This document shows, one piece after another, positions 5,228 through 11,219 of a stretch of DNA of 64,000 bases. The DNA lies in contig OZ251234.1 in NCBI GenBank assembly GCA_965240325.2, positions 1 through 64,000 of the forward strand, in the 5' to 3' direction. The number at the start of each line of letters is the position of its first letter. Positions within the stretch are counted from its first letter, which is position 1. Made by a program: the position numbers and the translations under genes. The notes beneath the pieces are model-generated. The model saw only the letters and a program-made list of their open reading frames with translations. It made no database searches and was not told the origin of the DNA. This stretch comes from Rebecca billardiae RCC1528. Its lineage: Eukaryota > Protista > Haptophyta.

Positions 5228-6530
5228 CACCTTGACTGCCCCCCAGCCCCGTTTTTGGCCGCACGATTGCGAATCTCAGAGTTACTTGGCCAGTCAATGT
5301 TTAGAGTTTTGAAGAAGGCGAAAGACTATCTGGCGGCCGAAACGAGGGACGGCTGTCCCGATGGCGTTCCGGCCGCGAAGTCCGCCGGTGCCTTGCACGA
5401 GGGCGGCCGATCAGTGGCGCCTAGCCCGGTCGTCCGCGCGGTTGTGTCAGCGCACGCGCCATGTGTGTGCCCCCCGCTGTCACGGCATGTTGTGCGCCAG
5501 CACAGTGGGAGCTCCTCGCCTGTTCCTGTCACTCACGGCTAAGCGACGGTGCAGAGATCTTCAGTCCGAGCCCGCGACTGCTGAACTTCATGTGATACGT
5601 GTGCGAATCCTGGCAGAAAAGCACGCTCTGCTCCCGCAAATCTACCTGGCGAACGTGCGCTGGTGTCAATGCTTCACGCAGTGCACAAATGCCATGGCGA
5701 ATCAGTCTTCCCTGCGTGTCACAGGCCTTGGCGTTTGCACATCGACAAGCTAACAGAGACGAGTCCCGACGAGCTGCGTATGGCTGTGGTCGCATGTAGT
5801 GTGGGCGTCGAACGCCGGAGAAGGTGGTGGCTGAAGGCGATAGAAGTATGCTCTCCCATCGGGTACAAGCCAGGCTTGGAAGACGTCTGCTTGCATCACA
5901 CACACAGCTTACGCCGACCCGTGCGACGTGAAGCGCCTCAAGCGTGACGGAAGCAACCCAAGGTGCGCGCAAGGCGTGAGGAGCAGGGTGATCTAACCTT
6001 ACGCGGGCCTGCTCATCTAGCAGCGCACTCAGTAGATCGCCCCCGTCCTCAGGCGCACGATGACCACCGAATCGTGAATGTGTAGACGCTGACGCGTGCC
6101 AGCTTGCGGCGAGCAGCGACCGTGCCGGCGGACTCGGGCCTCGCGCAAGAACAAGCAGGTTTTTTTGGCGCGGAGGACGCTAGCATGACCTGCACGTACA
6201 GCGGGGAGATTGTTTGCAAGGCGTGCCCTACATACAGCTCGCGTGCCCCTCAGATATCCCGCGCGGAGAACGTCAGCAGCCCAGCATCGCAGTCCGCGCC
6301 GCAGCCCCAACCACTCAGCTCCGCTACAGTGGGCGGTTCCCACTGGGGGGCCTGCAAAACAACCGCACCCGGATCTTGGCGAAGCTTCGGCGGCTCGAGA
6401 GAGGCCTCGGGAGGCGGCTGGAGGGCGTCCCGCGAGGCAAGCGCGGGCGCTGGGGCGCGAGGCGAGTGCGAGTCCGCCGCGTGAGCCGGCGGGGAAGTGA
6501 GCGCCACGAGTTCTGAGGCGAACCGGAGCG

Positions 6531-7699
6531 ATGGCGGACGCGCGCAAGCGCAAGACCCCGCCGAATCGCAGCGACTGGTACCGCGACCAGAGGCACAAGC
6601 CGGGGCCGACGCCGCGTGCGCGCTCGCGCGGCGCGCCAACCGTGCGTCCGCGGGGTGCAAAATCGGGCACGGTGGTTCCTCACGAGTTACTGTGAGCAAC
6701 ACGCTCCAGAAATTCCGCTTCAAAACGCCCGCCGGAAGCGCGGTCACCATACCTGACATCTGCTGCGGCGCCCCTTGCGCCGATCCGCCGTGCGCAGGGC
6801 CCAAGCCGCCGCGGACTCAGCGCCCGCGCGCGGAGTGGGAGCAGCTCGTGCAGGAGCAGATGCTGGACTCGGACGCGGGGGACGAGTCGAGCGCCACGTT
6901 CTGCACCCACTGCATGCGACGTTCCTGGGAGAAGACGGCCACGGTGCGGGTCGGCTGTCTCTTGCGCGAGTTGTTCTCGGAGATGGCAGCCAAGATGAGG
7001 CTGCCGCGTGGCAACGTCGTGCAGGGCGGGCGGGTGCAGCAGACGGCGTTGAAGAAGGTAGTGATGAAGCACGTCTCGCTCCACACGGCCTTTGGCATGT
7101 TCCGCGCCTTGGGCCCGTTCTCCCGCTCGCACACGAAGAGCTGCGGGCCGCGGGCGATGCGCCTCGTGCACTCGTGGGCGGTGACGTCGGCGGACAAGGT
7201 GGCCGAGTTCTTCACGCTGGAGGCGAGCCACTACATCCTCTCTCGGCGCACGCGGGGCCCGGCGAAGGTGCTCGGCTCGCGCAAGGCGCTCGTGGCCGCC
7301 CTGATCCCGCCGATCAAGATCGTCCACGTGCAGTGGATGGATCGCAACGGCCCGTACCGGACGGTGCTGAAGGTGATCTTTCGGACGGCGTGGGTCACGG
7401 TTGCGCGGCAGCCGGCAGTGCACCTGCCGACGGAGATTCTCGGTGCGCGCTCGCGGTCCGTGCGCGCGCGCGGCGCGGAGCAGCAGCGCTCGCTCCACCC
7501 GTGGGCCAGCGGCTGATGATCGCCCGCCCCGCGCCCCCCCCCCCCCCCCCCCCCGCGCGCGCGCGCGCTCGCAGCGGAGCTGTCGGAGGCGGAGGTGGCC
7601 GAGCTGAAGCAGTACATGGTGGAGCGCCTGCAGCATCTGGCGGAGGCGAAGCTGGTGACGATGCCGACGGCGGCGGAAGCGGCCGGCGGACGATCCTGA
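6531..7699 (+). CDS. Element ORF1, Cys-rich (ICCGAPC...FCTHC) protein; probably the N-terminal part of, or partner to, the transposase
   Basis: GC3-rich coding frame ~6710-7442. Intron GT 7443 to AG 7574 continues as AELSEAEVAELKQYMVERLQHL...RS* (stop 7697-7699). Candidate start ATG 6531 (MADARKRK) is in another frame and would need a small first intron. Confidence 0.6.
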
Positions 7700-9929: not shown

Positions 9930-10722
9930 CGGGCGGCGCGCATCTCGCGAGGAGGAGGGGCTCGGCGCGCACTTCACGCCACGCGCACCACCGAGCGGTG
10001 GCGGCGGTGCTGTTCCGGCGAGCGCGTCAGCTGCGCGTGCGAGCGATGAGCGCGACGTGAACGACGCGCGACGCATCGAGCTCTTCAAGCAGCTGGCGCT
10101 CATGGCCGCGGCGATTGAGGGGCCGCACGCCGACGACGCAGCGAGGCGTGCGGCGGCGGTCTGCGCCTTCCAGGCCGGCGTGCGCGCGCACCGCGCCTAC
10201 CTCCACTTCAACCGCTCGCACGTGTCGAACCACTGGCACATCTGCGTCTGCGGCATGGTCCAGCTGATGCTGCGCGGCGTCGACGTGAAGTCGTTCGCGT
10301 GCTACGGCAACGAGAACGTCGGCCGCCTGCTCGGGACCAGCCTGCACCGTCACGCCGCGCATCATCGCTCGACTACGTACACGCGCGGCGGCCAGACGCG
10401 CGAGCGGAAGAGCCGCGCGATGCAAGGCGTCGACGCTGCGCGGGTCGGCATGGCCCTTGCGCGGTCCAACGTGTGCGTCACGACGCCGGACTCGCAGCCT
10501 AGCTTGACTCGGCCGGCGAGCTTCACGCCGACGGTGCTGCCCGATCCATCGGCTCGGCGCACGCCGAGCACGCACCGCGCGCCAGGTGCGCAGTTGCGCG
10601 CGTCACCTCGCGCGCCCCGAGCGCGCGCTACGAGCTGTACGGGCTCGGAAGCTGACAGCATCCCCGCGCCCGGCGCCGCGACCGCGACTCCGCGCACAGG
10701 CTCGGGCCCCTCGGAGAGCTGA
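7634..10722 (+). CDS. RAG1/Transib-like DDE transposase (coiled coil + RNase H-like core + Zn-binding insertion); 5' boundary uncertain
   Basis: Motifs LAGDG (D 8791), YLCGDLPFLRMMLGL...LCMCD (D 9079), WFCKLC, PDYLH (9499-9510), RGEDGKLIL, SNHWH...FACYGNE (E 10312); strong GC3 bias in this frame. Confidence 0.8.
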
Positions 10723-11219
10723 TTTTCGTCCGCGCGCTCTGCTGAAGTCGCGCTGGTGAGCTCAGACGTCGGCGCGTACCCCGCCGGCGCTAGTCTGTCG
10801 CACCCCTTTTGTTCCGAGTCGCTCAGACCGCGCCGATCGTCAGATAGTTTTGAATTTCGGTTCCGCCACTGGGACCAGCCCACTGTAGCCCCTCGCCCAC
10901 CACGAGACGGCGAGATACCGACAGAAGTGGAACGGAGCGAGCATCTATTTCCTTATTGGGGCTCGCGGGAGCCGATTGATCATTTTTCATTGAGCGAAGC
11001 CCGAGCTGGCTTCCCATTGGACGGATTGGCGGCTGCGCTACTCCGCAAGGCGAAACACTTACAGCTTCACATCCCGAAAATGCAAGTTTGGACAATAGAG
11101 TGAGGCACCCTCGTCCAATGAAATTGCTGAAAATCCCGACGAAACTTTACTCGCACGTGCGGGTACACGCAATCTCCGGGAGATATGGCCAATTCCGCCC
11201 ACTGGGGCCATTCAAGGTG

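What the first reader, a model, noticed from the sequence alone, without database searches (positions are those of the whole stretch)
5228..11219. Apparently complete RAG1/Transib-like transposon in an algal subtelomere
Seen: a 5,992-bp TIR-bounded insert encoding a ~1,000-aa protein. Established: mouse RAG1 has D600 (SCDG), D708 (GYDEK...GL...CTLCD), DALH (H795), H937 and E962 (SEGNES). Here the same order occurs: AGDG (8791), CGDLPFLRMMLGL...LCMCD (9079), DYLH (9499), NHWH (10237), YGNE (10312). The H-to-E spacing is 25 aa, the same as RAG1 H937-E962, and both ends start with CAC like RSS and Transib TIRs. The Zn ligands differ (CxC and HICVC) and there is an extra CKLC insertion. No RAG2/kelch gene is visible. 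Inference: a divergent RAG1-like lineage outside animals, possibly still active.
Basis: partly seen in the sequence, partly recalled or inferred. Interest (0 to 1): 0.93.

Follow-up and report, generated by a model that had tools for sequence, protein, structure and literature searches.

The report
TSD-less RAG1-fold DNA transposon, new lineage
A complete 6-kb cut-and-paste transposon sits in a subtelomeric satellite; its enzyme folds like the antibody-gene recombinase RAG1, but it belongs to a rare, unannotated family from marine protists that inserts without the usual target-site duplication.

Summary
Thirteen intact copies of the 212-bp satellite fix the insert at exactly 5228-11219. Its ends are a bipartite inverted repeat of about 33 bp that starts CACCTTGA. 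The cited D, D, CxC, DxxH, H and E residues lie at the stated nucleotides.

The gene is probably three exons (6860-7442, 7575-7654, 7732-10722; 1,217 aa).

An exhaustive HMMER search of 1.8 billion proteins found six relatives. A profile search added about 30 more. All come from marine metagenomes or transcriptomes, and none has a Pfam domain.

The D/D/E, C, DxxH and H residues are conserved across this family. AlphaFold models of the window protein and of a relative match RAG1 first in Foldseek against PDB (E 1e-2 and 5e-5).

No sequence or profile search reaches RAG1 or Transib. The published CMCT clade (EnSpm, Mirage, Chapaev, Transib and others) shares these motifs, so a RAG1 hit does not prove Transib membership.

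The element has no target-site duplication, and neither do 99%-identical copies of relatives at other loci. Transib and RAG make 5 bp.

RAG-like transposons are already known in an alga.

Verdict: a new, recently mobile, TSD-less lineage of RAG1-fold transposases. Its exact placement is unresolved.

The parts
5228..11219 (+). Whole transposon insertion (5,992 bp) in a 212-bp subtelomeric satellite; no target-site duplication
   Evidence: Comparison with 13 intact satellite units. No second copy in the window.
5228..5260 (+). Left terminal inverted repeat. It starts CACCTTGA and is bipartite (positions 1-16 and 23-33).
11187..11219 (-). Right terminal inverted repeat (reverse complement starts CACCTTGA)
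   Evidence: 8/8, 14/16 and 23/36 ungapped matches. 39 of 20,000 shuffles reach the matches at positions 9-36.
5261..6859 (+). Non-coding 5' region (presumed promoter/UTR). No codon periodicity; GC 0.55-0.65.
   Evidence: No notable repeats.
6860..7442 (+). Putative exon 1 (start ATG at 6860). It encodes a family-specific N-terminal domain of unknown function (about nt 6956-7429).
   Evidence: GC3 0.93. 28-30% identity to two tandem copies upstream of the transposase in L001/L005, and to P0005. No Pfam hit.
7443..7574 (+). Putative intron 1 (GTGCGC...poly-C...CAG, 132 nt). It contains the in-frame TGA TGA and a 24-nt C run.
   Evidence: Inferred from loss of codon periodicity and preservation of the frame; no RNA evidence.
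7575..7654 (+). Putative exon 2 (26 codons, helical and charged)
   Evidence: GC3 0.96, GC2 0.23
7655..7731 (+). Putative intron 2 (GTGACG...CAAG, 77 nt). It shifts the reading frame.
   Evidence: inferred
7732..10722 (+). Exon 3: SR-rich stretch, coiled-coil-like region (about 7825-8250), catalytic core, C-terminal tail. The spliced product is 1,217 aa with only the terminal stop.
8752..10356 (+). RAG1-fold DDE catalytic core. D673 (8791-8793), D769 (9079-9081), C792-x-C794 (9148-9156), C853-xx-C856 (9331-9342), H887 (9433), D909-xx-H912 (9499-9510), H1155 (10237-10239), C1159 (10249-10251), E1180 (10312-10314).
   Evidence: Family conservation. hhalign of the two subfamilies: prob 98.5%, E 3e-15, 442 columns. 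AF2 plus Foldseek to RAG1.
9775..10050 (+). Ala/Pro- and RGG-rich disordered linker inside the core (between the DxxH region and the H...E region)
   Evidence: pLDDT below 50. An equivalent RG-rich linker occurs in relatives.
10723..11186 (+). Non-coding 3' region
   Evidence: no periodicity
4781..5227 (.). Flanking 212-bp satellite, left part (the target)
11220..13480 (.). Flanking 212-bp satellite, right part (the target)

Best explanation
This is an autonomous-type cut-and-paste DNA transposon from a previously unannotated, very rare family found in marine protists.

Its gene is probably three exons and encodes a 1,217-aa product. The parts of that product are:
- a family-specific N-terminal domain;
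- a coiled-coil-like region;
- a DDE transposase core (D673, D769, E1180) with RAG1-like architecture. An RNase H fold is interrupted after the second Asp by a Cys-x-Cys module, a CxxC/His module and a DxxH helix. A His (plus Cys) lies 25 residues before the catalytic Glu.

Inferred mechanism: the enzyme binds the CAC-initiated bipartite TIRs, excises the element, and reinserts it with no stagger between the two strand-transfer sites. Alternatively the blunt excised element is ligated into a break. Either route leaves no target-site duplication.

Shown here: the boundaries, the TIRs, the absence of a TSD, family conservation of the catalytic and zinc-type residues, the RAG1-like predicted fold, and recent mobility of relatives.

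Inferred: the introns, the catalysis, the zinc binding and the integration chemistry.

Phylogenetically it belongs to the broad CMCT/RAG1-like group of DDE transposases, as a distinct lineage. It is not a demonstrable member of Transib/RAG.
For: - Exact insertion in the satellite with 0-bp TSD.
- TIR significance.
- Codon periodicity: GC3 0.93-0.96 in three frame-compatible exons and none in the gaps, giving a 1,217-aa ORF with a single stop.
- Exhaustive HMMER: only 6 relatives in 1.84e9 representatives. A profile search adds 32 more.
- D/D/E, C, DxxH and H columns are conserved.
- Subfamilies A and B are homologous over 442 columns.
- AF2 without templates gives the order b1-D, b2, b3, a1, b4-D, with E in a C-terminal helix.
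- Foldseek against PDB returns RAG1 or BbRAGL for ranks 1-27 and 1-43.
- Relatives have CACAGTG/CACACTG termini.
- Full-length copies 99.0% identical sit at different loci with unrelated flanks and no TSD.
- A C-terminal fragment cluster includes MMETSP transcripts.
Against: - No statistically significant sequence or profile match to any known transposase family.
- The AF2 models are of middling quality (mean pLDDT 56 and 60, TM to RAG1 0.25-0.43). In the window protein's own model the first-Asp region is below pLDDT 50.
- No coordinates were available, so clustering of the three acidic residues was not measured.
- Only one copy is in the window.
- The introns have no RNA support. Without splicing, the N-domain ORF ends at a stop and the frames differ.
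- The CxC and H-x3-C spacings depart from the C(2)C and H(3-4)H of the CMCT clade (PMC12730594).
Confidence: 0.8

Rival explanations
1. It is a true but extremely divergent member of the Transib/RAG1L superfamily.
For: - RAG1 and BbRAGL are the best structural matches, over up to 650 columns.
- The termini start CAC. Relatives carry the exact RSS heptamer CACAGTG (RSS and Transib consensus in PMC1131882).
- RAGL and Transib relatives are known in a pelagophyte alga, bacteria, fungi and plants (PMC9435367).
Against: - 0-bp TSD instead of the diagnostic 5 bp (PMC1131882).
- No phmmer or hmmsearch hit to RAG1, BbRAGL or HzTransib chains, even at E up to 10.
- No Pfam RAG1 hit.
- HzTransib itself is only rank 48 (E 0.38) in Foldseek.
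- PDB apparently holds no other CMCT structure, so RAG1 may simply be the nearest available fold.
- No RAG2-like partner.
Confidence: 0.15
2. It belongs to an already named non-RAG lineage of the CMCT clade (EnSpm/CACTA, Mirage, Chapaev, Plavaka, ESTA or Lanisha).
For: - All these lineages share DDE plus Cys and His motifs and CA..TG termini. ESTA also hits RAG1 in HHpred (PMC12730594).
- CAC...GTG termini are present.
Against: - No member hits Pfam at E<=1, and no EnSpm (Transposase_21) or Plavaka model is listed even at E<=10.
- Those lineages make 2-5 bp TSDs, and here there is none.
- The motif spacing differs: C-x-C, and H-x3-C or a lone H.
- Chapaev, Mirage, ESTA and Lanisha could not be tested.
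Confidence: 0.25
3. The copy in the window is a dead relic. On this view the frame changes at about 7443-7574 and 7655-7731 are inactivating mutations or assembly errors (for example in the 24-nt C run), not introns.
For: - In-frame TGA TGA at 7514-7519 and two frame changes.
- A homopolymer run prone to errors.
- No second copy in 64 kb.
- No RNA data.
Against: - Both gaps start with GT and end with AG and restore one continuous frame.
- Codon periodicity vanishes exactly inside them and returns at 0.96-0.97 outside.
- 2.99 kb of exon 3 has no stop.
- In the relative L001 the N-domain and transposase ORFs are likewise separated by short gaps.
Confidence: 0.2
4. It is a hAT-like transposase. 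Weak Pfam Lin-15B-domain hits point this way; LIN-15B domains are hAT/ZBED-like.
For: Six members give sub-threshold Lin-15B hits (E 0.035-0.64) on the His...Glu segment. The LIN-15B domain is an RNase H fold with a hAT-like sub-region (PMC12570147).
Against: - All hits are far below the gathering score.
- No hAT structure is among the top 50 Foldseek matches.
- The termini start CAC, whereas the third base of hAT termini is always G (PMC1131882).
- There is no 8-bp TSD.
Confidence: 0.03

Closest known systems
RAG1 / RAG-like (ProtoRAG, AanRAGL) and Transib transposases
   Same: - Best and near-exclusive structural match.
- DDE on an RNase H fold with a Cys module after the second Asp, and a His 25 residues before the catalytic Glu in a GNE context.
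- Termini start CAC. Relatives carry CACAGTG, the RSS heptamer.
- Bipartite TIR.
- Relatives carry a convergent second gene, as ProtoRAG does with RAG2L (PMC9435367).
   Different: - No detectable sequence or profile similarity.
- 0-bp instead of 5-bp TSD.
- C-x-C instead of C-xx-C, and H-x3-C or a lone His instead of H-x4-H.
- An extra conserved CxxC/His module and an RG-rich linker.
- No kelch/RAG2-like partner. The partner in subfamily B is a chromodomain protein, and in subfamily A there is an unrelated N-terminal domain.
- No A-rich nonamer was recognised.
CMCT clade of DDE transposons (EnSpm/CACTA, Mirage, Chapaev, Transib, Plavaka, ESTA, Lanisha; Kojima 2025, PMC12730594)
   Same: [quoted passage not shown] 5'-CA...TG-3' termini. 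RAG1 is the structural reference for the whole clade.
   Different: - That clade makes 2-5 bp TSDs; here there is none.
- The motif spacings differ.
- No Pfam hit at E<=1 for any member, and no EnSpm or Plavaka model listed even at E<=10.
- Placement inside or beside the clade is untested.
Spy elements (PIF/Harbinger-related; Han et al. 2014, cited in PMC4482050 and PMC12730594)
   Same: Eukaryotic TIR transposons that insert without a target-site duplication.
   Different: An unrelated transposase family (PHIS). This is a resemblance in outcome only.

Membership tests
Transib superfamily | 5-bp target-site duplication (unique to Transib among eukaryotic DNA transposons; PMC1131882) | tested here: not met
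   The empty site reconstructed from 13 satellite units shows 0 bp duplicated. Relatives L004, L006 and L022 show no consistent TSD, although two of the copies are 99% identical.
Transib superfamily | Significant sequence similarity of the transposase to Transib/RAG1 core motifs | tested here: not met
   phmmer and profile hmmsearch against all PDB chains (including RAG1, BbRAGL and HzTransib) give no such hit at E<=10. No Pfam RAG1 hit.
Transib superfamily | TIR of about 38 bp with a CACAATG-like heptamer, a spacer and an A-rich nonamer; positions 1-3 are CAC | tested here: inconclusive
   CAC is present and the TIR is bipartite (blocks 1-16 and 23-33). The heptamer is CACCTTG and no A-rich nonamer is seen. 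Relatives have CACAGTG or CACACTG.
RAG1-like fold (structural class) | RNase H core with ZnC2/ZnH2-type insertion and C-terminal helical domain, as in solved RAG1 | tested here: met
   Foldseek against PDB: the window model gives RAG1 at ranks 1-27 (E 1.3e-2, prob 0.99). The relative's model gives RAG1/BbRAGL at ranks 1-43 (E 5.5e-5, prob 1.00, 600-650 columns, TM up to 0.43). Model quality is moderate.
RAG1-like fold (structural class) | Three acidic residues clustered at one active site | not testable with these tools
   Model coordinates are not returned. Only secondary-structure positions are consistent: D after b1, D after b4, E in a helix.
RAG-like (RAG1L+RAG2L) transposon | Linked RAG2-like kelch-propeller gene | tested here: not met
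   No kelch or other Pfam domain in any ORF of the element. The upstream domain has no detectable relation to anything known. The subfamily B partner is a Chromo-domain protein.
CMCT clade (PMC12730594) | [quoted passage not shown] | tested here: inconclusive
   Analogous but differently spaced. C792-x-C794 occurs in the three subfamily-A rows; subfamily B has C794-D-C796. H1155 is conserved 17/18, with a Cys at +4 in the window, P0003 and P0005 only.
CMCT clade (PMC12730594) | 5'-CA..TG-3' termini | tested here: met
   CACCTTGA...TCAAGGTG
CMCT clade (PMC12730594) | 2-5 bp TSD | tested here: not met
   0 bp
EnSpm/CACTA | Transposase_21-type transposase; CACTA termini; 3-bp TSD | tested here: not met
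   No Pfam hit for any of 25 members at E<=1, and Transposase_21 is not among the weak matches listed at E<=10. The termini are CACCT. No TSD.
Chapaev, Mirage, ESTA, Lanisha | Sequence similarity to the reference transposases of each lineage | not testable with these tools
hAT | 8-bp TSD; hAT core and dimerisation domain; third terminal base G | tested here: not met
   No TSD. The termini start CAC. There are only sub-threshold Lin-15B hits. No hAT structure is in the Foldseek top 50.

The most novel reading that the evidence does not exclude
This may be a new superfamily-level lineage of RAG1-fold DDE transposons, a sister of or deep branch beside Transib/RAG. It would have three notable traits. 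Its ends are RSS-like (CAC, and CACAGTG in relatives). It integrates with zero stagger, so it leaves no target-site duplication. It has recruited its own accessory modules, among them a convergent chromodomain gene that would be a chromatin-reading partner analogous to RAG2's PHD finger. It would offer an independent natural experiment on how RAG-type enzymes choose targets and partners.
Probability: 0.35. Interest if true: 0.85.

Novelty: new variant of a known kind. Interest (0 to 1): 0.7.

Why it matters
RAG1 and its transposon relatives are the textbook case of a mobile element becoming a vertebrate immune enzyme. Every known relative (Transib, ProtoRAG, the algal AanRAGL, RAG in vitro) makes a 5-bp duplication.

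This family has the same overall fold, and its relatives have RSS-heptamer-like ends, yet it leaves no duplication and carries different partner modules. It is invisible to Pfam and to sequence searches.

The family would widen the known diversity of this enzyme class. It would give a handle on what sets the stagger of strand transfer. It also supplies new sequences for rooting the RAG/Transib/CMC tree. In practice it is a family that current transposon annotation will miss in marine protist genomes.

Tried and rejected
- Word-indexed protein searches with the window protein and with P0002 found nothing beyond the query itself.
- Pfam on every piece and every relative gave no hit at E<=1; only sub-threshold noise appeared up to E 10.
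- phmmer and profile hmmsearch against PDB gave only low-complexity RG-rich or coiled-coil matches.
- Rfam on the window: nothing.
- Other copies in the window by blastn and tblastn: none.
- The AanRAGL TIR motif in the window: absent.
- The metagenome scan for subfamily A found only the locus already known and one overlapping contig.
- Viral contigs and BFVD: no relatives.
- Homology between the N-terminal domain of subfamily A and the chromodomain partner of subfamily B was rejected (BLASTP E 52; hhalign prob 1%).
- Subterminal repeat arrays inside the element: none convincing.
- Ends of the P0002-type element (L001/L005/L011): only a tentative CACAC...CAGTGTG pair, with no independent copies, so not used.
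- A telomere-targeting idea was weakened. The CCCTAA runs next to L007 and in L002 and L006 are interstitial and wrongly oriented for a chromosome end.
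Full report
**Setting.** The window begins with about 2 kb of (CCCTAA)n, followed by an 18-bp repeat array and a 212-bp satellite. The rest is 70-80% G+C and carries eukaryotic genes: AMP deaminase, an SDR, a PRPP-synthetase-like gene and an LRR protein. The finding therefore lies about 3 kb inside a chromosome end. I could not identify the organism. TTAGGG telomeres and high G+C fit pelagophyte algae (PMC9481584), but that is only compatible, not shown.

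**The observation.**
- TRF places the satellite at 4781-5231 and 11220-13480.
- Thirteen intact units read ...GGTCGCAGCGCCC AACCAC.... The interrupted one reads ...GGTCGCAGCGCCC|CACCTTGA......TCAAGGTG|AACCACAGC....
It also shows that not a single base of the target is duplicated or deleted.
- The ends are inverted repeats. The first 8 of 8 bases match and 14 of 16 match. A second block (CG..TTGGCC) lies at positions 23-33. Only 39 of 20,000 shuffles reach the number of matches at positions 9-36.

**Gene structure.** Third-position G+C is 0.93-0.97 in three stretches.
- 6860-7442 and 7577-7654 share one frame. 7732-10398 is in another frame.
- Periodicity disappears in the two gaps.
- Gap 1 (7443-7574) starts GTGCGC, contains a 24-nt C run and the stop codons, and ends CAG.
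- Gap 2 (7655-7731) starts GTGACG and ends AAG.
- Removing both gaps gives one 1,217-codon ORF with only its terminal stop.

I therefore read the gene as three exons. This is inferred and has no RNA support. The alternative is frameshift mutations or homopolymer assembly errors.

Exon 1 encodes a roughly 170-aa domain that recurs twice upstream of the transposase ORF in the metagenomic relative L001/L005. It also occurs in P0005, which looks like an internally deleted copy.

**Relatives.**
- Word-indexed searches found nothing.
- The exhaustive HMMER search of 1.84 billion cluster representatives found six proteins.
  - P0002 is full-length (989 aa, E 5e-17).
  - P0001 scored E 7e-21.
  - P0003-P0005 are three C-terminal fragments. 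P0004's cluster includes MMETSP transcripts.
  - P0006 is distant (E 6e-4).
- A profile search then recovered 32 proteins around P0006. All come from marine metagenomes and none has a precomputed Pfam domain.
- I call the window's group subfamily A and the P0006 group subfamily B.
- hhalign joins the two over 442 columns (prob 98.5%, E 3e-15). The two Asp and the Glu are aligned.
- The 'extra' CKLC is a conserved CxxC.
- The Cys pair is C-x-C in both subfamilies, offset by two positions.
- A Cys four residues after H1155 occurs in several subfamily A members only.

**What the protein is.** At the sequence level it resembles nothing known.
- No Pfam family is hit at E<=1 by any of 25 members.
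- Neither phmmer nor a family profile reaches any PDB chain other than low-complexity matches. PDB holds RAG1, BbRAGL and HzTransib.

At the fold level the answer is clear.
- Template-free AF2 of the window core (mean pLDDT 56; confident for residues about 300-500 and 590-690) gives RAG1 chains as Foldseek ranks 1-27. The best is 6cg0_A: E 1.3e-2, prob 0.99, about 485 columns.
- AF2 of the subfamily B protein P0029 (pLDDT 60, pTM 0.59) gives RAG1 or BbRAGL as ranks 1-43. The best is 6dbw_A: E 5.5e-5, prob 1.00, 600-650 columns, TM up to 0.43.
- In that model the strand-helix order is that of an RNase H fold. D112 ends strand 1, D197 ends strand 4, and E618 lies in a C-terminal helix.
- The window's D673, D769 and E1180 occupy the same places.
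- I could not measure whether the three carboxylates cluster, because no coordinates are returned.

**Why this is not yet 'a Transib/RAG1 element'.**
1. [quoted passage not shown] ESTA also hits RAG1 in HHpred. With no other CMCT structure among the PDB matches, RAG1 is the default best match for the whole clade. HzTransib itself is only rank 48 (E 0.38).
2. The hallmark of Transib and of RAG-mediated transposition is a 5-bp TSD (PMC1131882; AanRAGL in PMC9435367). Here the TSD is 0 bp.
3. There is no RAG2-like gene.

I could not compare the family with Chapaev, Mirage, ESTA or Lanisha for lack of reference sequences.

**The missing TSD is a family trait.**
- Subfamily B elements are about 4.15-4.2 kb. 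Their ends are CACAGTGCGA...TCGCACTGTG (L004 86-4250; L022 3001-7152) or CACACTGCGAGA...TCTCGCAGTGTG (L006 4558-8756).
- L004 and L022 are 99.0% identical over 4.16 kb but have unrelated flanks. A third, partial copy (L002) is 99.7% identical, with yet another left flank. So the family has moved recently.
- The flanks are tttt|...|gggc, ccc|...|ccc (inside a C run) and tca|...|cac. There is no consistent duplication of any length.
- Together with the reconstructed empty site in the window, this argues for integration with no stagger, or for end-joining of a blunt excised element into a break. Which of the two applies is inference.
- Spy elements of the PIF/Harbinger group are the known precedent for TSD-less TIR transposons (cited in PMC4482050 and PMC12730594).

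**Accessory modules.** In L004, L006, L007-9, L022 and L023-25 the transposase gene of subfamily B is followed by a convergent gene for a 200-320-aa protein. That protein has an N-terminal Chromo domain above Pfam's threshold. It is unrelated to the N-domain of subfamily A, and there is no trace of it in the window. A convergent second gene with a histone-mark-reader domain recalls RAG2's position and PHD finger, but that is analogy only.

**Activity.** The window copy has an intact ORF under the splice model. Its host-like codon bias is GC3 0.95, against 0.98-0.99 for neighbouring genes. Its TIRs are recognisable. Whether it can still move is unknown.

**Verdict.**
- It is too specific about the family.
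- It is mistaken in treating a RAG-like lineage outside animals as the novelty (PMC9435367).
- What is new is a rare, unannotated, recently mobile lineage of RAG1-fold transposases that makes no target-site duplication.

Noticed in passing
window 1-2468: The terminal (CCCTAA)n array is interrupted at 1247-1485 by an AAGTT-rich simple repeat and then resumes to 2055. It is followed by 23 copies of an 18-bp unit, CGCAGGTAAGGGTTAGGG (2055-2468). That unit carries the telomeric motif in the opposite orientation.
   Followed up: no
window 4781-5227 and 11220-13480: A 212-bp subtelomeric satellite (about 13 units, 88-92% matches). Its long ORF-like frames are artefacts of the repeat.
   Followed up: partly
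L004 2938-3900, L006 7445-8359, L007 6080-6994, L022 5843-6802, L023 2639-3280 (minus strand): Every subfamily B element carries a convergent gene for a Chromo-domain protein (Pfam E 1e-8 to 1e-11) with a conserved C-terminal region of unknown fold. This may be a chromatin-targeting partner.
   Followed up: partly
L012-L021 (P0048 locus): One subfamily B-like transposase gene, split into 439-aa and 245-aa ORFs, lies at the same locus next to abhydrolase and cyclophilin genes. It appears in at least 10 contigs (18 read) from different marine metagenome assemblies, and no Chromo gene was called nearby. It is either a fixed old insertion or a domesticated copy in an abundant species.
   Followed up: no
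L007 7145-7268; L006 9800-12200; L002 414-515: Runs of CCCTAG/CCCTAA or TTAGGG/CTAGGG occur beside or near family members. The L007 copy is truncated about 250 bp before its right end, just before such a run. The runs are interstitial: the orientation is wrong for a chromosome end, and some lie inside called genes.
   Followed up: partly
P0005 (353 aa; Logan contig): This protein joins the subfamily A N-domain directly to the C-terminal His...Glu region. It looks like an internally deleted, non-autonomous derivative.
   Followed up: partly
L001 189-878 and 1073-1711 (also L005, L011): The P0002-type element has two tandem copies of the N-domain upstream of the transposase ORF, where the window element has one. 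A tentative CACAC...CAGTGTG pair of ends could not be confirmed.
   Followed up: partly
window 7537-7560: A 24-nt C run followed by (GC)n lies inside putative intron 1. It could act as a polypyrimidine tract, or it could be a site of homopolymer assembly error.
   Followed up: no
P0028, P0029, P0033-35 C-terminal 75 residues: Repeated sub-threshold Pfam hits (E 0.035-0.64) of the His...Glu segment to the Lin-15B-like domain, a hAT/ZBED-like RNase H domain of Caenorhabditis. This probably reflects a generic similarity between transposase C-terminal helices.
   Followed up: partly
window 21857-24934, 35257-36819, 37480-39342, 41014-46872, 49239-50285: Host genes within 10-45 kb of the telomere: AMP deaminase (Pfam E 3e-236), an FAD-binding oxidase, a short-chain dehydrogenase, a 1,952-aa LRR_6 protein and a PRPP-synthetase-like gene. 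GC3 is up to 0.99.
   Followed up: no
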